Source: Vitrella brassicaformis CCMP3155
Lineage: Eukaryota; Protista; Chromerida
Assembly: GCA_001179505.1 (NCBI GenBank)
Contig: CDMY01001000.1
Span: forward strand, 163,605 to 227,604
DNA: 64,000 nt
Reading direction: 5' to 3'
The stretch's first letter is position 1. The number at the start of each line of letters is the position of its first letter. Position numbers and translations under genes: made by a program. The notes beneath the pieces were generated by a model, which saw only the letters and a list, made by a program, of their open reading frames with translations, had not been told where the DNA came from and did not search any database. Below, piece by piece: positions 8,766 to 55,948 of the stretch.

Positions 8766-9016
8766 TTCGGCCTGATAAGAATGCGCCCTTCTTTATGTGT
8801 GCCCACACACCCCTGCCCTTGCACACGCTGGACAATTCACGACACATCCACGCATAGAGAGTCATATGGCTGACAAAAATCACAACGCATTTCCTCTTCG
8901 CCACTCAGATCTCAGACACACAGTCAGCCAGACACCGAGTGAAGAGCCCCCGGCCACACGCATGAGTGTGTGACACACACAGCTGCCCACTACTGTGTGT
9001 GTGTGTGCACTCTCTC

Positions 9017-10854
9017 TTACTCTATGCCGATCAACCGCAGCTGACGGTAGGGGGCACCAACGCCTCAGTTTGATTTGCCTGACTTCCCCCTCCCGCATCG
9101 ACAGGATCGCTTCATCCAACCACTCATTCCGAAAATCAGACACACGATACACCAGCCCACGGTTATCGCAGTTTTTTTTCCTGGCCGTCGAATGCATCAT
9201 TCCACCAAATCCAGTCGATCTCGACGGTGTCGTTGTCTGTGGGCACTCTGCCGGTGCCCTCCTGCACCACCTCATATCGATAGCCATACGATGGCGATGT
9301 GCCAGTCCGGCGGCCGACAGTGCTGCGATTGGCCGGCTGCCGCTGTGACGATGAGGAGCCCTCCTGCCGCTGACGGACTGTGGCACCACCACCATTGCCG
9401 CCGCCAGCCGCTGCTGCGCTGCACACAGAGAGCAGACACAACGCCAATCACGAGAGAGAGGTAAGGGCTGCTCACCTCAAGTAGCCTCCCCAGCCAGACG
9501 ATGGCAGTGTGCCGGTCCGAGGCGCCACACTGAGAAGAACGGAACAAAGATGGCCAATTGGTGCATCTGCTGGCCCTGTTGGGCTTTACCTGGCCTGTGG
9601 TGTCGGTGTGTCGGTCTTGGCAATGCCGTACATGGCCGCATTGACGTCAAATGGCGCCTGATCCGTCTCGCTAGCCATCGTCAGCACCGCAGCCATGTCG
9701 GCGGGCGAGGCGCCGAGTCGCTTTCTGCGGTAGTAGTCGACCATGCGGCCGATGTGGTCGGGATCGACCACCTCCACCGCCCGGCTGCTGGACCACCTGA
9801 CGGCACACAAACAGTGAGAAGCACATCAGTGTGTGTCGTTGTGTGTTGGTGTGATGGGCTCACAGGTCAAATCGATTGGCCAGTGCGATGTCGCCCATTT
9901 CGTCCACAGTGGACTGAGTGGTCGAGGTGAGCTGTCCGCACACCTCGACCGACCGAATGGCATCGCCGCCACTCAGAGGCAGCAGAAAGGGCTCGACGGC
10001 CTGACACACACAGCCACAACCATCAGACCAACAGACATTTCCCTCTCTCTCTGCTCATAATCATGTCGTCACCTGAATCTCTTTGTCGAGATTGTCGCGT
10101 CGTGTGTTGGCGGCCCGCAGCTGCCGCTCTAGCCGGGCCTTTTCCTTGGCAAAGGCTTTGACGATGGCCTCCATCGCCTTGAGGGCGGCGGCCGCCTCGG
10201 TGCGGCTGTTAGTCAGCGACCCGGTGGGCACTCCATCGGCGCGTGAAGAATCAGCGGCATCCTTGTCGAGAGGCGTCATCATCAGTTTGACCCAGAAGCC
10301 ATGGCGACCTGCAACAGACACACCACACAGGCAGCCAAAGGAAGAATGACGACACAAGGAGACTGTGTCATCGCCTTCATTGCCCTCACCCTTGTCGCGC
10401 TTGGCCACTTCATCGAGCAGATGGCCGACCGACGCCGCCTTGCCGGCGCTGCGAAGGGTCTCCGCATTGAGGATGGCCTTGTGGACGGCCTTGAAGCCTC
10501 CGGGCAGATGTCGACGAACACCCGCTGGCTGTCGTCTTTGACGAGTCGGCCCTCCCAGCAGCCCCCGAAGAGGGCCGCCAGTAGAGTGCCCTCCACTCCC
10601 TCTCCCTGAGTCACGTGCTGCCGCCTGACGCTCATCAGATGGCCGCCCACATTCAGCAGCAAAGTGTCGTCAGGGGAGGCCGCCGAGGGGTCCGATGCGC
10701 CGTGCTGCTGCCTCTCTCGCTGGGCGTCCTCGTCAGCCTGGCGGATCTGTGTGTGCAGCTGGCTGATGGCGTCACCGATGGCCGTCACGGGCACGTGCAG
10801 CTCATTGAGAATCGCATGGGCGCTGAACCGCCGAGCGGCCAACTCGCCCTCCAT
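9017..10854 (-). pseudogene. BTB/POZ-BTB-FKBP-like gene copy with frameshifts
   Basis: DDTLLLNVGGHLMSVRR...RVFVDICP (KCTD-type BTB). Relative to the paralog at 32298-33949 there is a 1-nt deletion near 10497. The FKBP exon (9418-9017) has an extra base in an A-run near 9175 and a second shift near 9050. Confidence 0.75.
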
Positions 10855-26940: not shown

Positions 26941-27283
26941 TGTGTGTGTCGTCGGCAGTCCCTTCATTGGCGGCGGCGCCACTCTGCGCCGTCGAACCGG
27001 CACACTGCCATCGTTTGGCTACCGGTATGAGGTGGTGGAGGAGGGCACCGGCAGAGTGCCCTCACTCAACGACACCGTCAAGTACGACTGGATTGAGTGG
27101 CGTGATGCATTCGACGGCCGGGACAAAGTATTCGATAGGCGTGGGGAGGTGTATCGTGTGTCTGTTTATAGTGGGTGGTTCCGTGAGGCATTGCTGGAGA
27201 TGCGTGAGGGGGAGGTCAGGCAGATCAAAGTGCCATACGGCAGAGGCCCCTACCGTCAGCTGCGGTTGGTCAGCATAGAGTAG
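26615..27283 (+). pseudogene. Variant module (VGLTVWG type) + FKBP-like domain, with a frameshift in the module
   Basis: GIMTTFGRTLVGLTVWGEGK...ELL / shift near 26703 / VTVVDNG...GVRFFD. A phase-2 intron leads to the intact FKBP exon 26959-27283. Confidence 0.65.
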
Positions 27284-27496
27284 GAGAGAGTCCCCACACA
27301 CACACATGTGGGGGCGGCTGTGTGTCACACACTCATGTGTGCGGCCGGGGGCTCGTCACTCGTCACCTGCCTGGCCGTGTGCTCTGGCTTTGAGCGAAGG
27401 AGTGAGTACGTTGGCTGTGTGTCTGTCTGTCTGCGATGAGTGGATGAGCGAGCGTCGTCTGGGTGGCCGCCTTGTTTATCGGTCGGCCGGCCACAG

Positions 27497-38798: not shown

Positions 38799-39420
38799 AT
38801 GAGTGACCGTGTTGTCGGGCTGCTGGACGGCTATGCCGTTTATGAGGACGGCCACGGCGGCTATGAGGCGGACGTTAGAGGGCAGCGAGTGGCCATCAAG
38901 CTCTCGTTCCATTCGCACATCAAGTTCTGCTTCGAACACCACGACGTGAGCGGCCGAGCCTCACACAGGTGTGTTGCACTCTGACTGACTTGCTGCCCTT
39001 TTGTGTGTCAGGCCATCTGCCCGTTCCAAGCGCCGCCGTCAAGACGACCACAACGGGCCACCAGCAGCAGCAGCCGCCGCTGCAGCAGTGGGCGAGGGAG
39101 CGGCGGTCAGCAATGGCAACATTCCTGAGGGCTTCGTGCGGCTCCCCAGCGGTCGCTACCACAAGGTCGTGCAGGAGGGCACCGGCAGAGTGCCCACCGC
39201 CGACCAGCGCGTCAAATTCGACGAGATTGGGTTTACTGATGCATTCGACGGCCAGAACAAAGTCTCCGATTACCGTGAGTGGGTGATTCGTGTGTTTGAT
39301 GGGATTGAGTGGTTCCGTGAGGCGGTGCTGTCGATGAGAGAGGGGGAGGTCAGGGAGATCATCACGCCAATCGGATCTGCGCCCACCTACCGTCAGCTGC
39401 GGTTGATCAGCATAGAATAG
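38799..39420 (+). CDS. Module + FKBP-like gene; the splice phase between the exons may be broken
   Basis: MSDRVVGLLDGYAVYEDGHGG...IKFCFEHHD with a donor one base later than in the 42251 copy. The FKBP exon 39013-39420 is intact. Confidence 0.6.
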
Positions 39421-44616: not shown

Positions 44617-45356
44617 TTAGCCAGACGAGGAGCGAGGAGCCCCCGGCCACACACTCATGAGTGTGTGACACTCACAGCCGCTCACACGTGTGTGTGCGTG
44701 TGTGTGGACTCTCTCGAACTCTATGCTGATCAACCGCAGCTGAACGTAGGGGCCGCAGCCTGGCAGTTTGATTTGCCTCACTTCGCCCTCCCGCATCGAC
44801 AGCAACGCCTCACGCATCCACTGACGCCAATCAGACACACGTTTCACCAGCCCACGGTAATCGCATGCTTTGTTCTGGCCGTCGAATGCGTCCCACCACT
44901 CAACCCAGTCGATCTTGACGCGGTCGTTGAGTGTGGGCACTCTGCCGGTGCCCTCCTGCACCACCTCATACCGCGCACCAGATGGCGATGTGCCGGTCCG
45001 ACGGCGCAGAGTGGCACCGCCGCCATTGGCCAGACTGCCGATGACACACAAACACACACACAAAGCCAATATATAACCGTTCACACACGAGGCATAGGCA
45101 AGAGAGAGGCAAGGGCTCCTCACCTCGGGTTGTTTGATGGTCTCTGCCCTATCGGCAGAGCGATGGGCGGGCTGGTGCTGAAGTCGAGGAAGCGGACGCC
45201 CTTATCGCCCTCTGCCAGCCGGGTCACAATCGCGTCGCCACTCAGAGGGCTCGTGACTTCGATGAACAGCTCGCCGGGCCGGTTGGGGTACTCGAAGACG
45301 TTCTCCTTGCCCCACACAGTGATGCCCACCCACCCGAGGCCAGCTGCCAACGCCAT
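44617..45356 (-). CDS. Variant module (VGITVWG type) + FKBP-like gene with stop-codon read-through
   Basis: MALAAGLGWVGITVWGKENVFEY...GVRFLD, a phase-2 intron, then the FKBP exon. The family TAG after ISIE is TTC here, extending the ORF to 44617. Confidence 0.72.
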
Positions 45357-47501: not shown

Positions 47502-47999
47502 CTACAGAATGCTGATCAGGTGCAGCTCCACATAAGGCGCCGCAGTGCCTCCTCCCTCGCAGCTGCAGCAGGGCAGCATGATGCGCCGCACCTCCCCCTC
47601 CCGCATAGCCATCATCGCCTCTCGCAGCCACTCATGCAGATCGGACAGCTGGCGGATCTCGCCCAGCCGCTGCTGCCTGCCGCCAATGCCATGTCCGACG
47701 GTGGTGTAGTCGTACACGACGGTCTGGTCGATGGATGTGGGTGTCCGGCCGGATGGGCTGCCCTCGCGTATCGTCTGATGGAGTGCACCTGAGGGCATTT
47801 CGGTGATGGGGAAGCCACTGTGGCTGCTGAATGCATGTCTGTATTCATGAGCAGAGAACAAAGGGAAAGAAGCCTGCCTAGTGCTGCTCCCAGTCACTCA
47901 ATCACCCACCTGGTCTGTGTTTGTGTCTGTGCGCCATGTTGTGTGGATGTGGGTGTGTTGGCCATGGTGACATCGGAATCAGCGGCCGACTGCTCCCCG

Positions 48000-48046
<47 letters not shown>

Positions 48047-49360
48047 CAGACGTGACGCACACACGAACACGAGCGGCGGGTCTGTGTGTATTTGCTCACG
48101 CACCCTCTCATGATGCTGGCAAGCCGCAGCTCGACATATCCCTTCTCTGGCAGTATAATCCGCCGGGTCTCTCCCTCCCTCATGGCCATGATCCGCTCCC
48201 TCAGCCACTCTCCCATGTCCGTCACACGGCGCACCACCCCCCGCTGCTCGAAGTCTGTGTCGGTGTCGAATCCGTCCCGCCAGGAGGCGATGTCGTATCT
48301 GACGGTGTCGTTGAGTGTCGGTCCATTGCCGGTGCCGCGCTGCACAACTCTGTGGTAGGCGCCAGATCGATGGCGGACAAATCCTTCATGACCGCTGCAA
48401 ACCCATCACAGACACGCACAGCGCACAGAGAGAGAGATGTGTCTCTGATCCACACCGACCCTTCCCCAAATGGACATGTACGTGGGCGTGTGAGTACCTG
48501 TCCACAATATGGATAAGCCGGATGTGTGCGAAGGCGAATCCAGGTGTGATGATCCGCCGGATCTCCCCCGTACGCATGGAAAGCAGCGCCTCACGTAGCC
48601 ACTCCTGCGTGAAGTCCGCCACACGGGACTCCGCCCCATGAGCGTCGAGTATCGTCTGGGTGCCGTCAAATGCGTCTCGCCACACACGGGCATCGTACTG
48701 GACGGTCTGGCTGAGTGTGGGGCTGGTGCCGCAGCCCTCTGTGGTTGTGCGATAGCGAGCACCCGATGAGGGCGATAAGGTGAAGCAGTCGTCACTGCAC
48801 ACACACACACACAAGGACAGCACACAGCCATCCATTCATTAGAGAGTTGTTGTGCGTTGGCGTGCGTCCCATCTGTCTGTGTCACCTGTGTGTTGTACCT
48901 ACCTACCTTGTGGGTGTGTTGGAGGGGTGCTGAGTTACATAGCCATCCAGCATACAGACATCCGATTCGCTGCACACACGCCACGCCATCAGCAGACACA
49001 TACATCCACGCATCCATCCTTCATCTCTCTGTGTCATCTATGTGGCCCTTCTCATGATTTACCCACCTGCCGTCCGTCTGGGAATTGGTTACCATCTCAT
49101 TCGCCGACAAACCTCCATGACTCGCCTTTCCCGGTGTGAGTGTGAGTGTGTGTGCCGTGGAATGGGTCTGCATGTCCGTGTCTATGGGCAGCTGCGGGTG
49201 CGTCGGGGTGGGTGTGGGCAGCAAAGGCGGGGGGGCTGGTGGGTGAATGACCAGCAACTTGTCTTGTGCTGGCCGCATCTGCTGGTGAGGCGGGCTGTCA
49301 GCCTTGCGCTTTGTTCCTGTCCCTGCCAACGATGCCGCGGTGGCACGTCGCCCCTCCTGA
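47502..49360 (-). CDS. Protein with three tandem FKBP-like domains
   Basis: Domains at about 48795-48498, 48395-48104 and 47830-47502 are joined by phase-2 introns that keep frame. Each shows the xSGxxY/H...G...PT...YD...WLRE..M.MRxGExRRI..P...LxLxxI pattern. The 5' end is unresolved. Confidence 0.78.
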
Positions 49361-50399
49361 TCGAGCGACACAAACACACACAATACACACATAATGAAAC
49401 AGGAGCCGGCGATGATTTCAATGAGTCTTTCTACCTTCAAAGCTAGCGCAGCTGCACAGCCTTCTGTGAAGGCCGCCGTTTTTTTCTCCTCTGCTGATGC
49501 GATGCCGCTCAGCTAACCACTGCACACACAACACAACGATGCAGACACACAGACAGATGATCTATGTCGTTCATGGCGCTGGTTTGGTCTGCGTCTGCTT
49601 TCGTGAAAATTTTCCAACAATTCACCTGTCCTCTCTCCTGCAGAGCATCTGTGAGGCGAATGGCTCCGTTTTGGCTCTCCTTTTTCCCCCTTTCCCTTGC
49701 GAGCTTTGTAATCAATGGATCGCCGATCGCGAGAAGCAACACCGAGAGTGGAAATGGCACGCTGGGTTGGGGAATCGGTGGCTTTGCTACGGGAGTGAGG
49801 GAATCAGCTTCGTCCCTGCCGTATGGGAATCTATCGTTGATTGGCCCATCTATCTGTCTACACATCTATCTGCTGCGGACAGTACGGGTGGTGTGGCGCT
49901 GATCTGGCCAGCTGGTGTGAGCGAGCTGACTCAGTGAGTGAGCTGAGTGAGTGGGTGTATCTATCGTGTTGATTGACTGGTTTCTTTCAGGTGGAGGAGC
50001 AGCGTGATGAATGGATTCCACGATGACGCTGCTGCAAGCACAAGCAACGATGACACGTAAGCACACAGACGCGCACGAGATACACAACGTTCAACAGAAC
50101 AGATCATGGACTGCGTCGCTACATCTCTTTCTCTCTGTTTTCTTCTGTGTGTGTGTGTTTGTGTTCCATCCGCATGTGTGTGTTCAGTGGTTCGTGTGTG
50201 GGTGGTGGGGATGTGCGTTACACGAGTCACGGTGAGGGAATTGCCTGTGAGAGCCGACTCTGTGAGGAGCTGGAGAGGGCCGTCAGGGAGGGCAATGTCG
50301 GCGCTGCAAAGGTCTGCGGGTGGGGGGGATGGCTGGATGTGTGATGTGTCACATGCTTAGTCACGCTTTGTGTGCGGATGGCTTTAATCGTAGATCTGA

Positions 50400-50435
<36 letters not shown>

Positions 50436-50627
50436 TGTTGTGTGGCATCGCTTGTTCCTTCGTTGGTTCGTTCGTCAGGCGTCAGTCATCTCTCTGGCTC
50501 GGCTCAAGTCGTCATCTCTGCAGGTGCGGGTGAGGGACAGGTACTACGCCAACAGACACTCATCCGCATCAGCAGCATCGGCGTCGAACCCTTCGCACAC
50601 CTTGATGAATGGGTAACCTCCCCTCCC

Positions 50628-50927
50628 NNNNNNNNNNNNNNNNNNNNNNNNNNNNNNNNNNNNNNNNNNNNNNNNNNNNNNNNNNNNNNNNNNNNNNNNN
50701 NNNNNNNNNNNNNNNNNNNNNNNNNNNNNNNNNNNNNNNNNNNNNNNNNNNNNNNNNNNNNNNNNNNNNNNNNNNNNNNNNNNNNNNNNNNNNNNNNNNN
50801 NNNNNNNNNNNNNNNNNNNNNNNNNNNNNNNNNNNNNNNNNNNNNNNNNNNNNNNNNNNNNNNNNNNNNNNNNNNNNNNNNNNNNNNNNNNNNNNNNNNN
50901 NNNNNNNNNNNNNNNNNNNNNNNNNNN
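50628..50927. other. Assembly gap (300 N) at a poly-C tract
   Basis: Visible N run; the two flanks resemble each other (aatgggtaacctcccc / aatggtaacccccc). Confidence 0.99.
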
Positions 50928-50991
50928 AATGGTAACCCCCCCCCCCCCCCCCCCCCCCCCCACACACACACACATACACATGACAGACACG

Positions 50992-51469
50992 CTCAAACAT
51001 CCATTCATGGTATTGCCCATGCGTGTGTGCAGCACTGTCGGCCGTCGGAGCGGCACATCGCCATCTGGCAACCGGTATGAGGTGGTGCGGGAGGGCACCG
51101 GCAGAGTGCCCTCGCTCAACGACCGCGTCAAGTTGTCGTGGATTGGGTGGCGTGATGACTTCGACGGCTGGGACAAAACAAACGAGGCCGTTGGGGTGGA
51201 GCGGCGTGTGTCTGATCTGACTGACTGGCTGGATGAGGCGTTGGTGGAGATGCGCGAGGGCGAGGTCAGGCGAGTCAAACTGCCAGGCAGCGGATCTTAT
51301 TTCCCATACCGTCAGCTGCGGTTGATCACCATCATAGAGTAGGAGAGACTGCACACACACACAAGTGTGAGCGGCTGTGTGTGTCACACACTCATTCATG
51401 TGTGTGGCCGGGAGCTCCTCGCTCCTCAAACATCCATTCATGGTATTGCCCATGTGTGTTTGCAGCACT
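50992..51469 (+). repeat. 45-bp direct repeats (50992-51036, 51425-51469) bracketing an FKBP-like cassette
   Basis: ctcaaacatccattcatggtattgcccatg(c/t)gtgt(g/t)tgcagcact, with 2 mismatches; each copy contains a splice acceptor. Confidence 0.92.
51033..51342 (+). CDS. FKBP-like terminal exon (candidate alternative last exon of the upstream RBR-gene exons)
   Basis: TVGRRSGTSPSGNRYEVVREGTGRVPSLNDRVKLSW...WLDEALVEMREGEVRRVKLP...YRQLRLITIIE*. Confidence 0.8.
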
Positions 51470-54400
51470 CATGGTGGTCGGCACTCCAGCGGCTCCTCGG
51501 CATCGCCTTCGTCGGCATCGGCATCATCGTCTTCTGTGCCCAAGCACACCCGACACACCATCAAGGGCGGCAGCAAAGCCTGCGGGGTACGATACGCCTG
51601 CATATGACACTCAGACAGACAGACAGACAGACAGAAGGATGTATGCTGGTGTGGTTGTTGGTGTGGTTGGTGTGGTTGGTTGGTGTGTCCATTCCTCCCT
51701 CCCTCCCTCCCTCCCATCAGCTGTGTCGGCGTCAGTTCGCTCGCGAGCAGCTCGTCAATCCGGACTGCAACGTACCCATACACACATACGTTGACACACA
51801 CGCGTGCCTTCTTTCTTTCTGCGTCACTCAATCAATCAATGATCTTCTTCCCTTCTTTCAGGTTCACTTCTACTGTCTGCCCTGTCTGTCTGAGTGGATC
51901 GAGACACAAGCGCCTAACGGAGACTTCGTCAAGTGGGAATGGACACCCACCCATGTCACACACACGTGCACACACGACACACGCACTCTCATGGATGTGT
52001 TTGATTGTCGATGGGTTCGACAGCCATCAGGTGTCTTGTCCGGAGTGCCCACACGTCCCGCTCACTGTTTACCAGCAGAAGTAGAACCACACACACATGA
52101 GATGGGCCACATACAGACACACACATGGATGGATAGACACATGTGCTCACCTGTTGTCTGGTCTGTGTGTGGTCAGGTATTGCATTGGCACCGAGAGCTG
52201 GTCAGCAAAGGAGGCCGAGCTGACCCAACAGCTGCTCCAACAGATCGCACAAAGTACGGAGGCGCCACAAATCATCGACAATCGCTGCACTTGGGCAAAC
52301 AGATCTCTCTCGCTTCCTCTGTGTGTGTGCAGGTGAGCCTCCCGTGGCGTATCAAGGGTCGACCGACGGTGCGTCGCCGTATCTGGAGGGTTCGTTCCAC
52401 TGCCCCGTGTGTCTGGAGGACAAACGCGTCGACGGCTCCATCCAAATCGACTGCGGACATCGCATATGCGGGTCTGTGGGTGGGTCTGTTGAGAGGAGAG
52501 AGATCCACACACACACACACACATCGACACACAGACACATGGATGGACACATACTTGTCGGTGTGGTGTGGTGCTGTGCTGTGTGTGTGCAGTCATTGTT
52601 TTTGTCAGTATGTGTCGTCGCTGGTCAAGGAAGCCAAAGTCTCACGTAAGCCCTCCCTCCCACACACACACACACAAACACACGAACACACGCATCCATC
52701 CAGCCATCTATCCATCCATCCAGCCATCCATCCATCCACCATGTGTGATGTGCAGAGAGCGACCTGAAGTGCCCGTACGAGAACTGCGGGATGCCGCTGA
52801 CGAATGAGCAGATCCAGGGCGCCCTGTCAGACGAGCTCAAACAGAAATTCCTCGACTACCGGTGCGTGAGTTGCTTGGCACATGTGGCCCTCACATCGAT
52901 GTGGAGGTGTGTATGTCTGTGTGTGTGGTCAGTGCGCGTCAGTACCAGCCCGAGGGCCAGGAGATCATGGCCAGCTGTCCCACACCGAACTGCGGCACCT
53001 TCCTCGTCCCCAAAGACATGAAACGAGTACCCACCGACCTACAGAAGACAACAAACAGAGAAGCATTGATGTTCGTCCGTTCTGCGTGTGATGGTGTGCA
53101 GGCCAAGTGTCCCGTGTGTCTGATCGAATTCTGCCCTCACTGCTCCAACTTGGTACACACACGCGGACAGAACACACCTACCTGCACACACAGAGGGTCG
53201 GTCGATCTGTGTGGCGACATGTACATGTACAGGCGCATGACCCGCTGACGTGCGAGCAGGCTGCGGCATCGACTGAGGGAGAGAAGCAGCTCAAGTCACT
53301 CGGGGAGGAAAAGGGCTGGAAGGTGGGCACGACACACACACACACACACATCCGTGTGCCATTGATTGTGTGGACGGTGTCCTTCGTCAGCCGTGTCCCA
53401 AGTGCAAGGCGATGTGCGAGAAGGTAGGTCCTTACAGCACACAGTTTGGGGCGACAGACAGAGAGATTGAATGCTTTCTGTCATCATGCAGGTCCTCGGG
53501 TGCAACTTCCTGACTTGCTGCGTACGCGTAAAGACGCCATGGCCATACCCACAGATGCACTGCACGCCAATTGTCCATGTTGCTCTGTGCGTGTGTGTGT
53601 GTGTGTGTGTGCAGTCGCCCAGGTGCCGTGGTCAGGGGATCCATTTCTGCTACATCTGTGGATCGCAACTCACACGCAAAGAGGTAGGTATGCATGGGAG
53701 AGAGGAAGGAAGGCCACACAGAAAAGACACACGCGGACAACACACCGACCGGTGCACATGTACGTACATGTGTGCATACGTGTCTGTCTGTCTGCAGCAT
53801 TACGATCACTTTCCGAAAGGGCCCTATGAGTACAGCTGCGTCAATCTGCCCAAGCCGCCCAAAATACCGCCAAGCGAACAAAACGGAGAGTCGGGCGAAC
53901 CAGGTACAGTACGATCAGTGTGTGGGTGGGTACACATGGGACACGTGTGTGTGTGTGTGTGTGTGTGTCCAGGCATCCGCATTCTGTTGCGGGGTCAGCG
54001 GTTGGGTCCGCTGGGCGACCGTTTGATCAACGAGATGCGACGGGCGGGAAGCGGCGAGCTGCGGGAGGGAGGAGGAAGGCTCAACCAACGAATACACGGT
54101 GGGTGGGCGGGGCGGGTGAGAGGGGACACATGTGCGCACACACACATGAAGGGCTTGATGGATGGCTGTGTGTGTGTGAATATAGATTTGCTGCCCATGT
54201 TCCCTGCCCCCGCCCCGCGAGCTCCGCCACCGCCTCCTGCTGCTGCGCCTGGGGCTGCGCCGCTGGGTGACAGAGTGCCGCAGCTGCTCAACCGGCCGGC
54301 GGAGAGGCCTGAGAGGCCCCCGCTGGTGCGGCTGCTGCAGAGACAGCACAACCCACCAACACCAAATGCACAGGTCGGTGGGTGACACACAGACACAGAG

Positions 54401-55948
54401 GCAGCAAAGGAGAGAGACGTACATGGACAGATGTGACGGACAAATGGATGGATGGATGGATGGACGGATGTGTGTGTTATCTCAGCCACTGCCTGTCCAC
54501 CGCGGATCCATTCCACAGCCACAGCCGTACCCACCCCACCAGCAGCTGCAGCCGGAGCCCTTGCCGGAGCCCTTGCCGGAGCCTTTCCCCCCTGCTGCTG
54601 CTGCTGAGCCTGGTCCCCCTCTCAACAGCAATCAGCTGCATCCTTGGTTCAACAACGGCATCATGGCTGGCTTTAGGGGATTCTTCCGTACGCAATGACG
54701 CAACACACATACGGACTGGGTGATGGGTGCACAAGGGTGGATGGATGTCTTGGTGTAGGTGGGGGCGGCGGTCTGCTGCCCACTCCCTCTCCCATTCCCT
54801 TGATTGACGGAAGCCCAGCAGCATCGCCCTTTTCACAGCAGCAGCCGATGGCAATGGATGCGGACCAACAGCAACACAGGCCAGCGACCCCTCTGCCATT
54901 CGCTGTCAGCCACCCTCCCCATCGCATCAACATCTTGCAGCCGCCACCACCACCACCGCCACCGCCGCCGCCACCCGTATACGTCATCACACAAGGGAAG
55001 TGCAGACAGACATGAGCGGGTGTCTGGTGTGTGTGTGCAGGATGGTGGTCTTGGTGCATCACCGAGCAGGCTTGATCCAAGGACACCCCCATTCATCCCA
55101 TCTGCTGTGGCCGCTGCTGCTGCTGGTGGGAACCACACTCTCACATCGCTGAGTGGAGCTTGGGTGATGGATGGATGGATGGATGGATGGGCATGTGATG
55201 TGATGTGTGTCCGTCCATCAGAGAGGGCGTCATCGTCTGTCATATCACAGGGCGATCCAGAGCCAGCAGAGCCGCCCTCGCCCATACCAGGCAAACACCC
55301 CTCCCACTCTCCCTCCACACACGCACACACACACACACACACGGATGGATGAATGGATGTGTGTGTGTGTGTGTGTGTGCAGAGTGGGAGAGTGAGGAAG
55401 TCGGGCCGCACGTGCCGCCCTTGCCGATGGAGCACTTCATGTCGTCATCCGGAGGCATGTCCCTCTCCGGCCTTTCTCTCTCGTCGGCATCTGCCTCTGC
55501 GGGGAGGGCTGCTGCTGAGGACAGCACCAACAACACCAGCAATAAGCCCCCTCAGCAGCAGCAGGCAGCGCCATCTATGAGTCTGTTCTCCCGCAATCCC
55601 TTTCTGCCCGACAACCACAACACACCACCCCGCCCACCTGCTGCTGCTTCGTCCTCTTCCGCCGCTGCCGCTGCTGCTGCTGGTGGTGGTGCTTCTGACA
55701 TCAACAGCAACAGCGATGATGAGTCGCCCGTCCCTCTGCCTTTGCTCTGTCTGCCCATGCCGGGGCTGGCGCATCTGTCAGGCGAGTACGCGAGTGAGCA
55801 GCCGTTCATCATGCCACACGCAGGCGGGCCGCTGATGGAGCGGCCTGTCATGTGGGCCGACCGAGAGAGCCGACACACCGAGAGAGATGGTCAGGGGGTT
55901 GACGAAAAGCGGCAAGAGGGAGAGGGGAAGAGTGGGGAAGGGACGTAA
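51466..55948 (+). CDS. RBR (RING1-IBR-RING2) E3 ubiquitin ligase with an extra N-terminal RING and a Pro/Ala-rich tail; possible 5' exons at about 50007-50612
   Basis: CGLC...CNVHFYCLPC...CPEC; CPVCLED...CGHRIC..C...KCPYENC; IBR CPTPNC...CPVCLIEFCPHC...HDPLTC; RING2 CPKC...GCNFLTC...C...FCYIC...H. The tail exon structure is uncertain. Confidence 0.85.

What the first reader, a model, noticed from the sequence alone, without database searches (positions are those of the whole stretch)
50992..51469. Cassette caught in the act: FKBP exon inserted in an RBR ligase gene between duplicated splice acceptors
Seen: 45-bp direct repeats (43/45 identical) bracket exactly the FKBP exon plus its conserved 3' flank. 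Each repeat ends in tgcag|cact. Both acceptors are phase 2 and in frame with an upstream donor near 50612, giving either FKBP (TVGRRSG...) or the RBR body (THGGRHSSG...KACGLC). Inference: an acceptor duplication, resembling a target-site duplication, created an alternative terminal exon. One promoter could then yield either a short N-term-FKBP protein or the full E3 ligase. This suggests how the other fusions arose.
Basis: partly seen in the sequence, partly recalled or inferred. Interest (0 to 1): 0.85.

Follow-up and report, generated by a model that had tools for sequence, protein, structure and literature searches.

The report
FKBP exon inserted into RBR ligase
In the alga Vitrella brassicaformis a small FKBP-like domain exon sits in an intron of a ubiquitin-ligase gene between two copies of that intron's 3' splice site; RNA data show it spliced in frame into the ligase because its apparent stop codon is its splice donor, which leaves an unusually clear footprint of exon shuffling.

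Summary
50992-51036 and 51425-51469 match at 43 of 45 bases, and their 30-base core occurs only twice in the window (0 expected by chance). The repeats bracket one of about 17 FKBP-like exon cassettes, and the second copy starts exactly where homology to the cassette family ends. DNA contigs from two culture studies and one sediment metagenome support the junctions, so this is not a misassembly.

A spliced 4195-nt contig in run X10 joins exon 3 (to 50612) to the FKBP exon (51033-51338) to the ligase exon (51466 onward). The two acceptors are used in series, not as alternatives. The exon is 306 nt and phase 2-2. Its TAG (51340-42) overlaps the donor GA|GTAGGA and is spliced out. The product reads N-terminus, FKBP-like domain, then RING/IBR/RING2.

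Most likely a paralogous cassette was copied into a phase-2 intron of the ligase gene, duplicating 34-45 bases of the acceptor, with 4-8 and 2-3 bases of microhomology at the junctions. I found no empty site and no donor copy. The nearest copies have dS of at least 0.17, against 0.044 between the repeats.

The scan had already noted this family on other DNA (s1-205476, s1-209539). I rate this a new variant of exon shuffling, interest 0.6.

The parts
50007..55948 (+). Whole host gene. The public annotation of Vitrella brassicaformis CCMP3155 (CDMY01001000.1) calls one gene with exactly these limits and a 1071-aa product. My transcript-guided model has about 1074-1084 aa with the FKBP exon.
   Evidence: annotation limits; exon chain, open frame
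50479..50612 (+). Exon 3, the last N-terminal exon. It ends in phase 2 (GG|gtaacc).
   Evidence: RNA contig piece 50477-50611; translation
50613..51032 (+). Intron 3. It contains the 300-N scaffold gap (50628-50927), whose two edges repeat the same AATGG(G)TAACC + C-run, so the real intron is probably about 100 nt.
50992..51036 (+). Left copy of the 45-bp repeat: the 3' splice-site region used by the FKBP exon.
   Evidence: used as an acceptor
51033..51338 (+). FKBP-like cassette exon: 306 nt, 102 codons, phase 2-2. It encodes one complete trimmed FKBP fold.
   Evidence: RNA contig piece 51032-51338 with 0 differences. Family profile against PDB FKBP/Mip chains, E 1.7e-7. AlphaFold pLDDT 90.5 and Foldseek TM 0.72-0.77 to FKBP/Mip domains.
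51339..51344 (+). 5' splice site GTAGGA, which overlaps the in-frame TAG (51340-51342). Splicing removes the stop.
   Evidence: Joint 51338 to 51466 in the RNA contig. The motif is near-invariant in 14 cassette ends.
51339..51424 (+). Cassette-derived 3' flank, which here forms the 5' part of intron 4. It is 80-88% identical to the flanks of other copies and is cut off at 51424, whereas paralog flanks run on.
51425..51469 (+). Right copy of the 45-bp repeat: the 3' splice-site region used by the first ligase-body exon.
51466..51586 (+). Exon 5: a Ser-rich linker that leads into the first zinc finger (…KACG|LC…).
   Evidence: RNA contig piece 51466-51586
52333..53683 (+). RBR core, spread over eight short exons: RING1 (52333-52861), IBR (52933-53322) and the RING2/Rcat-like part (53391-53683).

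Best explanation
A roughly 390-bp unit was copied from a paralogous cassette into the phase-2 intron 3 of an RBR-type E3 ligase gene. The unit comprises one FKBP-like domain exon, its own 5' splice site and 82-86 nt of family-specific downstream flank. The event duplicated the last 34-45 bases of the target, namely the intron's 3' splice-site region and the first bases of the next exon. The new exon therefore received a copy of the host acceptor, and the host exon kept its own. The cassette is symmetric (phase 2-2, 306 nt) and its stop codon lies inside its splice donor (GA|GTAGGA). The exon is therefore spliced in as an internal exon and the mRNA encodes N-terminus (104 aa), FKBP-like domain (102 aa), Ser-rich linker, then RING/RING1-IBR-RING2. 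The exon chain, the splicing and the open frame are shown by data. Three points are inferred: the direction of the event (insertion into a pre-existing ligase gene), the mechanism (a microhomology-guided template switch or fill-in repair rather than a transposase or reverse transcriptase), and the function of the FKBP-like domain as a binding or targeting module of the ligase.
For: The repeat is real and unique. The second copy starts exactly where family homology ends. DNA contigs from two studies cover both junctions, and a metagenome contig covers the right one. The spliced RNA contig has consecutive record positions 369-503 | 504-810 | 811-931 on 50477-50611 | 51032-51338 | 51466-51586. 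The exons not listed in its table sum exactly to the record gaps: 256, 54 and 50-51 nt. The frame is open through all 15 confirmed exons and onward to the annotated stop. Leaving out the FKBP exon also gives an open frame, as expected if exon 3 once joined exon 5 directly. The junction bases are shared between target and family: GCAGCACT is coding sequence in copy 9321 and CACT occurs in several others, and CTC continues the flank of copy 45012. Nothing at the ends resembles terminal inverted repeats or a poly-A tail. Among 47 cassettes in the window and four other loci, this is the only one whose flanking repeat is followed by a non-cassette exon. The other flanking repeats belong to tandem cassette arrays. 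Internal use of cassettes through the same stop/donor is routine in the family: P0006 next door has three in series, P0001 has six stretches, and the P0151 gene has donors GA|GTAGGA and GA|GTAAGA followed by short introns.
Against: I found no empty site (a ligase allele, paralog or ortholog with a single 45-bp copy). No donor copy was found. The closest copies in the window are 75-78% identical in the exon, with dS 0.17-0.26, against 2/45 differences between the repeats. The best cassette in the 1.84-billion-protein library is 63-69% identical. So either the donor is lost or unassembled, or the repeats are kept alike by selection or conversion, or the repeat is younger than the exon's arrival. 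The RNA evidence is one assembled contig from one run whose kind is not on record; it is RNA-like only because it lacks introns at GT..AG borders. The public 1071-aa product could not be retrieved, so I could not compare it with my model.
Confidence: 0.7

Rival explanations
1. One reading: the FKBP exon is an alternative terminal exon. One promoter gives either a short N-term-FKBP protein (stop at 51340, cassette flank as 3' UTR) or, by skipping the exon, an FKBP-less ligase.
For: The in-frame TAG is present, and the flank is the sequence that paralogs carry after a terminal cassette. RNA contigs of paralogs cover that flank at high depth in X10 (bin 51304-51420, indel row at 51392). The skipped form keeps the frame. 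Neither protein search returned a public protein containing this exon, which could mean the annotated model skips it.
Against: The only spliced contig over the locus includes the exon and splices out the stop. The flank here is cut at +82 while paralog flanks continue, so signals for 3' end formation may be missing. By length, the annotated 1071 aa is closer to my with-exon model (1074-1084 aa) than to the model without it (972-982 aa).
Confidence: 0.12
2. The FKBP exon has been in this gene for a long time, and the 45-bp identity is secondary: a later local copying or gene conversion of one intron's 3' end onto the neighbouring intron.
For: The repeats differ by 4.4%, whereas the cassette is at least 17% (dS) from any copy I could see. 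The probability of 2 or fewer differences is 0.04 if the true divergence were 14%, and 0.003 at 20%.
Against: The right copy begins precisely at the point where cassette-family homology breaks off, and the left copy ends precisely where it begins. A later, independent 45-bp copy would have no reason to respect both limits. A 45-bp tract with no flanking homology is a poor substrate for conversion.
Confidence: 0.12
3. A mobile element moved the cassette: L1-type retroposition of an mRNA 3' end, or capture by a Helitron or Pack-MULE. The 45 bp would then be a true target-site duplication.
For: Direct repeats flank the insert. LINE-mediated insertions can leave long, variable duplications (own knowledge). 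The insert is a 5'-truncated copy of a terminal exon plus its 3' flank.
Against: There is no poly-A tail or A-run at 51424/25. There are no terminal inverted repeats and no Helitron-type termini. The insert stops within the family flank, which continues for at least 50 nt further in paralogs. Bases are shared at both junctions. None of the other cassettes examined has such a duplication.
Confidence: 0.04
4. Assembly artefact: two loci or haplotypes were joined beside the gap.
For: A 300-N gap lies 64 bp upstream, and short-read contigs break at the (CA)n and (TG)n runs inside the cassette flank.
Against: Contigs from two independent DNA data sets overlap across 50987-51603 with no differences, and one contig (51383-51603) joins the copy-specific flank, the right repeat and ligase exon 5. 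A metagenome contig does the same. The RNA contig joins all three exons. The two repeat copies differ at two positions.
Confidence: 0.02

Closest known systems
Classical exon shuffling by insertion of a symmetric, phase-compatible module into an intron (Gilbert; Patthy's phase rule); own knowledge
   Same: One exon equals one complete domain. The exon is symmetric (2-2) and sits in an intron of the same phase, so the reading frame is preserved both with and without it. The same module is found on many unrelated genes (RING, BTB, SET, CBM20 by the sources' own names).
   Different: The animal cases are mostly phase 1-1 and are inferred from domain distributions. Here the junctions themselves survive: a duplicated acceptor and short shared bases. 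The module also brings its own donor, fused to a stop codon.
Composite terminal exons / intronic polyadenylation switches (e.g. immunoglobulin mu secreted versus membrane forms); own knowledge
   Same: An exon whose 3' end can act either as a 5' splice site (internal use) or as the end of the coding region followed by a 3' UTR (terminal use). In this family both uses occur, in different genes.
   Different: At this locus only the spliced use was seen. The dual signal is compressed into GAG-TAG / GA|GTAG and travels with a duplicating cassette. No switch within a single gene was shown.
Microhomology-mediated templated insertion (FoSTeS/MMBIR, or fill-in of a staggered break with captured DNA); own knowledge
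   Same: Insertion of an ectopic copy, 2-8 bases shared at each junction, duplication of the target beside the insert, and no transposon hallmarks.
   Different: The mechanism is inferred from the junction anatomy of one old event. No donor sequence was identified, and the enzymology in chromerids is unknown.
Introner elements and other transposons whose insertion duplicates or creates splice sites in algae; own knowledge
   Same: A repeated unit spreads through genes of an alga, and splice signals are supplied partly by the element and partly by duplicated target sequence.
   Different: Introners create introns and carry no coding exon. This unit adds an exon. No element termini or recurrent target duplication were found among the 47 cassettes examined.
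Gene-fragment transduction by L1, Helitrons or Pack-MULEs (PMC4778049 and PMC5860796, seen only as titles and abstracts)
   Same: Exon-sized fragments are moved into other genes and can be spliced in.
   Different: The defining features (poly-A, inverted repeats, Helitron ends) are absent here.

Membership tests
FKBP-type domain (PF00254 fold) | Significant sequence match to FKBP family models | tested here: met
   The single exon scores only 15.3 bits against a cutoff of 21.1. A profile of 22 cassettes hits FKBP/Mip chains in the PDB at E 1.7e-7 and below, 37 chains in all.
FKBP-type domain (PF00254 fold) | FKBP fold: a five- to six-stranded sheet wrapped round a short helix | tested here: met
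   The model has pLDDT 90.5 and pTM 0.82. The top 50 Foldseek PDB matches are nearly all FKBP/Mip/FkpA domains, probability 1.00, TM 0.61-0.77 by query.
FKBP-type domain (PF00254 fold) | Intact prolyl-isomerase / FK506 pocket, including the 80s loop | tested here: inconclusive
   The profile alignment ends at position 85 of 99. The stretch between the PxxG motif and the last strand is much shorter than in Mip or FKBP12 (alignment, read against my own knowledge of FKBP12). Activity was not assessed.
RBR (RING-between-RING) E3 ubiquitin ligase | IBR domain | tested here: met
   PF01485, 25.8 bits against a cutoff of 24.3, E 1.1e-5, on 52934-53152 even with a translated in-frame intron inside.
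RBR (RING-between-RING) E3 ubiquitin ligase | RING1 of C3HC4 type upstream of the IBR | tested here: inconclusive
   Only half-domain exons could be submitted by reference; they gave RING models at E 0.015-0.04, below the cutoffs. The full cysteine/histidine pattern is visible in the spliced translation.
RBR (RING-between-RING) E3 ubiquitin ligase | RING2/Rcat with the catalytic cysteine | tested here: inconclusive
   The motif CPKC...GCNFLTC...C..C...FCYIC is present in my predicted exons 53391-53683. There was no Pfam hit on the intron-interrupted reference. Phe stands where the His after the catalytic Cys is usual (own knowledge).
Transposon or retroposon insertion with target-site duplication | Element termini (inverted repeats, poly-A, LTR or Helitron ends) and recurrence of similar duplications at other copies | tested here: not met
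   No such termini are visible. No comparable flanking repeat occurs at 46 other cassettes, except those produced by tandem arrays.
Composite (dual-use) terminal/internal exon | The same exon end is used as a 5' splice site | tested here: met
   Joint 51338 to 51466 in the RNA contig.
Composite (dual-use) terminal/internal exon | The same exon end is also used as a terminal exon with polyadenylation at this locus | not testable with these tools
   Only assembled contigs were available, and they cannot show RNA ends.

The most novel reading that the evidence does not exclude
The FKBP-like cassette is a self-sufficient 'mobile exon'. It is a phase 2-2 domain exon with a built-in stop-in-donor signal, and it spreads into phase-2 introns by a copy-in process that duplicates the host acceptor. 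Any landing is therefore immediately viable, either as a new C-terminus or as an internal domain. This locus would be the one insertion young enough to still show the mechanism by which Vitrella attached the module to RING, BTB, SET, CBM20 and RBR genes.
Probability: 0.25. Interest if true: 0.85.

Novelty: new variant of a known kind. Interest (0 to 1): 0.6.

Why it matters
Exon shuffling is usually inferred long after the event, from intron phases and domain distributions. Here the DNA junctions of one event are still readable: a duplicated 3' splice site, a few shared bases at each end, and a flank cut mid-way. RNA shows that the result is used in frame. The locus also shows a simple way for a module to be portable. 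Its stop codon lies inside its 5' splice site, so the same exon can end a protein or sit inside one. For Vitrella biology, it adds an RBR ligase to the ubiquitin-system genes that carry this fast-evolving FKBP-like domain, which fits a role for the domain in target recognition. It also indicates that the protein with this domain may be missing from the public protein set.

Tried and rejected
1. Empty site or relatives in JGI metagenomes. An exact 22-base pattern from the repeat found nothing. The exon-3 peptide gave 599 pattern matches but no relative by tblastn.

2. Retrieving the annotated 1071-aa product. It was not among the 150 best of 270 hits in the exhaustive search with the FKBP exon, nor in a region-restricted search with P0014 (which had only 71 candidates and also missed known family members). 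The spliced protein has no reference and I did not type it in. As a result, the whole-protein Pfam scan, the homolog search and the ortholog comparison for the ligase were left out.

Manual models gave 1084 aa, or about 1074 aa (hand estimate, not computed) with a shorter exon 25 and a GC donor, against 982 or about 972 aa without the FKBP exon. This does not settle the question.

4. A conserved RNA hairpin in the cassette flank. RNAalifold found 11 pairs and no compensatory change, so I rejected it.

5. Extension of the repeat into the exons. An anchored alignment scored 0. A shifted local match (51043-51067 against 51510-51536) was reached by 6 of 2000 codon shuffles, but both sides are (TCGGC)n-like. 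I treat it as low-complexity sequence.

6. The same footprint at other cassettes. There was none in the window. In L002-L005 the flanking repeats come from tandem arrays.

7. Literature. No paper links Vitrella and this FKBP family. The search on splice-acceptor duplication returned only transposon papers.

Full report
**What is in the sequence.** The window is eukaryotic, 57% G+C, with short GT..AG introns rich in (TG)n and (CA)n. It lies in contig CDMY01001000.1 of Vitrella brassicaformis CCMP3155: locus L001, fetched through a neighbouring protein, is identical to window 37502-59095. 50992-51036 and 51425-51469 match at 43 of 45 positions (family D13). The first 30 bases are identical, are not simple sequence, and occur exactly twice in the window even when 3 mismatches are allowed; 100 shuffles gave none.

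**The cassette family.** The FKBP-like exon between the repeats is one of about 17 copies in the window, on both strands (tblastn; blastn). Homology of this copy to the others starts at the GCAGCACT that ends the left repeat and stops at 51424, the base before the right repeat. In the paralogs the flank continues for at least 50 more conserved bases.

**Not an assembly artefact.** Logan contigs of two DNA data sets from different studies (X1, X2) lie on 50987-51362, 51333-51407 and 51383-51603 without a single difference. The last of these joins the copy-specific flank, the right repeat and the ligase exon in one contig. A contig from a marine-sediment metagenome (X9) covers 51389-51493 with three differences. 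The 300-N gap upstream is probably empty: both of its edges read AATGG(G)TAACC followed by a C-run.

**How the exon is used.** Run X10 holds a 4195-nt contig that lacks the introns at GT..AG borders, so it is a spliced transcript. Its consecutive record positions 247-368, 369-503, 504-810 and 811-931 lie on 50188-50309, 50477-50611, 51032-51338 and 51466-51586. Further pieces lie on 52333-52470, 52756-52860, 52932-53026 and 53232-53322, and there is a joint 50056>50188. The short exons that its table does not list (51721-51771, 51862-51932, 52024-52080, 52177-52253; 52593-52645; 53102-53152) add up exactly to the record gaps of 256, 54 and 50-51 nt.

The FKBP exon is therefore internal. It is entered through the left acceptor from the donor after 50612. 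It is left through its own donor at 51338|51339, and the right acceptor at 51466 follows. The exon is 306 nt, so it enters and leaves in phase 2. The TAG at 51340-42 is the TAG inside GA|GTAGGA and is spliced out, and the junction codon becomes GAC. From the ATG at 50007, which is also the annotated start, the 15 confirmed exons give an open frame of 508 residues: 104 N-terminal residues, the 102-residue FKBP-like domain, a Ser-rich linker, and then zinc fingers. With my own predicted exons the frame stays open to the annotated stop at 55946-48. Leaving the FKBP exon out also keeps the frame.

The test here is the RNA contig.

**Identity of the two parts.** A profile of 22 cassettes matches FKBP/Mip isomerase chains in the PDB at E 1.7e-7. 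The exon alone folds with pLDDT 90.5 into a structure whose best 50 PDB matches are nearly all FKBP-type domains, TM 0.61-0.77. The region corresponding to the 80s loop is shortened, and I did not assess activity.

The host is an RBR-type ligase. The IBR passes Pfam's cutoff (25.8 against 24.3 bits) even with an in-frame intron translated inside it. RING models hit the half-domain exons below threshold. The spliced translation shows the RING1, IBR and RING2 cysteine patterns in order. The whole spliced protein could not be submitted to any search because it has no reference, so that step was left out.

**The cassette carries a dual signal.** Of 14 cassette ends in the window, 11 read GAGTAG and one reads GAGTAA (stop plus GT). 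One reads GAATAG (stop only) and one reads GAGTTC (GT only). Many public Vitrella proteins end with the domain. Others carry 2-6 domains in series, which requires the stop to be spliced out: P0001 has six stretches, P0002 has four, and P0006 next door at 47502-49095 has three. In the P0151 gene the same GA|GTAGGA and GA|GTAAGA ends are followed by short introns. In X10, paralog-derived RNA contigs cover the flank at high depth, which is what a 3' UTR would look like. So the family uses the same exon end either as a protein end or as a donor. At this locus I saw only the donor use.

The flank (80-88% identity to the other copies) is better conserved than the exon (70-78%). Pairwise dN/dS of the exon is about 0.7-2.1, in line with the earlier follow-up on the family (s1-205476). 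A conserved hairpin in the flank is not supported.

**Origin.** The simplest history is a copy-in of a paralogous cassette into intron 3 of a pre-existing ligase gene, with duplication of the acceptor region. Five observations support it:
- The limits of the repeat coincide with the limits of family homology on both sides.
- Exons 1-3 and the ligase body have no homology to any of 154 family proteins outside the FKBP domain.
- Exon 5 has no start codon of its own in frame (seen directly in the sequence), and the skipped form is a complete open frame.
- The junction bases are ambiguous between target and family. GCAGCACT is coding sequence in copy 9321 and CACT occurs in several others, while CTC continues the flank of copy 45012. 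The true duplication is therefore 34-45 bases, with 4-8 and 2-3 bases of microhomology.
- There is no poly-A, inverted repeat or other element terminus.

This anatomy fits a microhomology-guided template switch, or fill-in repair of a staggered break, better than transposition. That is an inference from one event.

**Limits.** I found no empty site and no donor copy. The nearest copies have dS of 0.17-0.26, while the repeats differ at 2 of 45 positions. The probability of so few differences is 0.04 at 14% true divergence and 0.003 at 20%. The donor may be lost or unassembled, the repeats may be constrained, or the repeat may be younger than the exon. The right junction (flank, repeat, ligase exon) is shared with an environmental lineage that differs by a few percent, so the event is not very recent.

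Among 47 cassettes in the window and four further loci, this is the only one with a non-simple flanking repeat followed by a foreign exon. Elsewhere such repeats come from tandem cassette arrays. The footprint therefore cannot yet be generalised to 'how the other fusions arose'.

**Annotation.** The public record has one gene with exactly my start and stop and a 1071-aa product. Its length is closer to my model with the exon (1074-1084 aa) than without it (972-982 aa). Yet no protein containing this exon surfaced in an exhaustive search of 1.84 billion representatives. I could not resolve this.

**Verdict.** The acceptor duplication is real and probably marks the insertion. The 'alternative terminal exon' reading is replaced by serial splicing through a stop-in-donor signal, giving an N-term-FKBP-RBR protein. 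This is a new variant of exon shuffling with unusually legible junctions. No paper that I could find describes it.

Noticed in passing
window 50628-50927 and its edges: The 300-N scaffold gap is flanked on both sides by the same motif (end of exon 3, then GTAACC, then a C-run; one G differs). The two contig ends probably overlap, and the gap hides little or nothing apart from a poly-C tract.
   Followed up: partly
window 44719-45012 (-) and 39118-39417 (+): Two cassettes have separated the dual signal. Copy 45012 reads GAGTTC (donor kept, stop lost) and copy 39118 reads GAATAG (stop kept, GT lost). This suggests they have become fixed as an internal and a terminal exon respectively.
   Followed up: partly
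window 8925-9321 (-): Cassette copy 9321 has frameshifts and stops in its middle, so it is probably a decaying copy. Its upstream coding sequence contains the GCAGCACT that acts as the acceptor at 51026-51036.
   Followed up: no
cassette 3' flanks, e.g. window 51339-51424, 27281-27375, 44624-44718 (-): The roughly 85-nt non-coding flank (GTAGGAGAGAG, (CA)n, GGGGGCGGCTGTGTGTGTCACA..., GGCCGGGGGCTC) is better conserved between copies than the coding exon. No covariation supports a hairpin. Its function (3' end formation or splicing control) is unknown.
   Followed up: partly
window 53492-53521: The RING2/Rcat motif of the ligase reads GCNFLTC, with Phe where parkin, HHARI and HOIP have the His next to the catalytic Cys (own knowledge). 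The ligase may have altered chemistry.
   Followed up: no
window 53471-54382 and 53027-53101: Several introns of the ligase gene (25, 38, 23 and 29 codons) are in frame and free of stops, so retention or mis-annotation would go unnoticed. This may explain the odd length of the annotated product.
   Followed up: no
window 47502-49095 (-): The neighbouring gene (P0006, 348 aa) carries three older, more diverged FKBP-like cassettes in series. The two internal ones have plain donors and no stop.
   Followed up: partly
runs X9, X12-X15: Marine-sediment metagenomes from 2023-2025 hold near-identical pieces of this locus (0-7% different). A close relative of the cultured Vitrella strain therefore occurs in sediments and could provide natural alleles.
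   Followed up: no
L002 11125-11260 and 11535-11660: In the RING-FKBP gene P0151 the introns after internal cassettes differ. One replaces nearly the whole flank with a short intron. The other uses an AG created inside the family flank itself (…ctgacag|) as the next acceptor.
   Followed up: no
window 51043-51067 vs 51510-51536: There is a weak local similarity between the cassette leader and the Ser-rich ligase linker (reached by 6 of 2000 codon shuffles). Both are (TCGGC)n-like, so it is probably compositional.
   Followed up: partly
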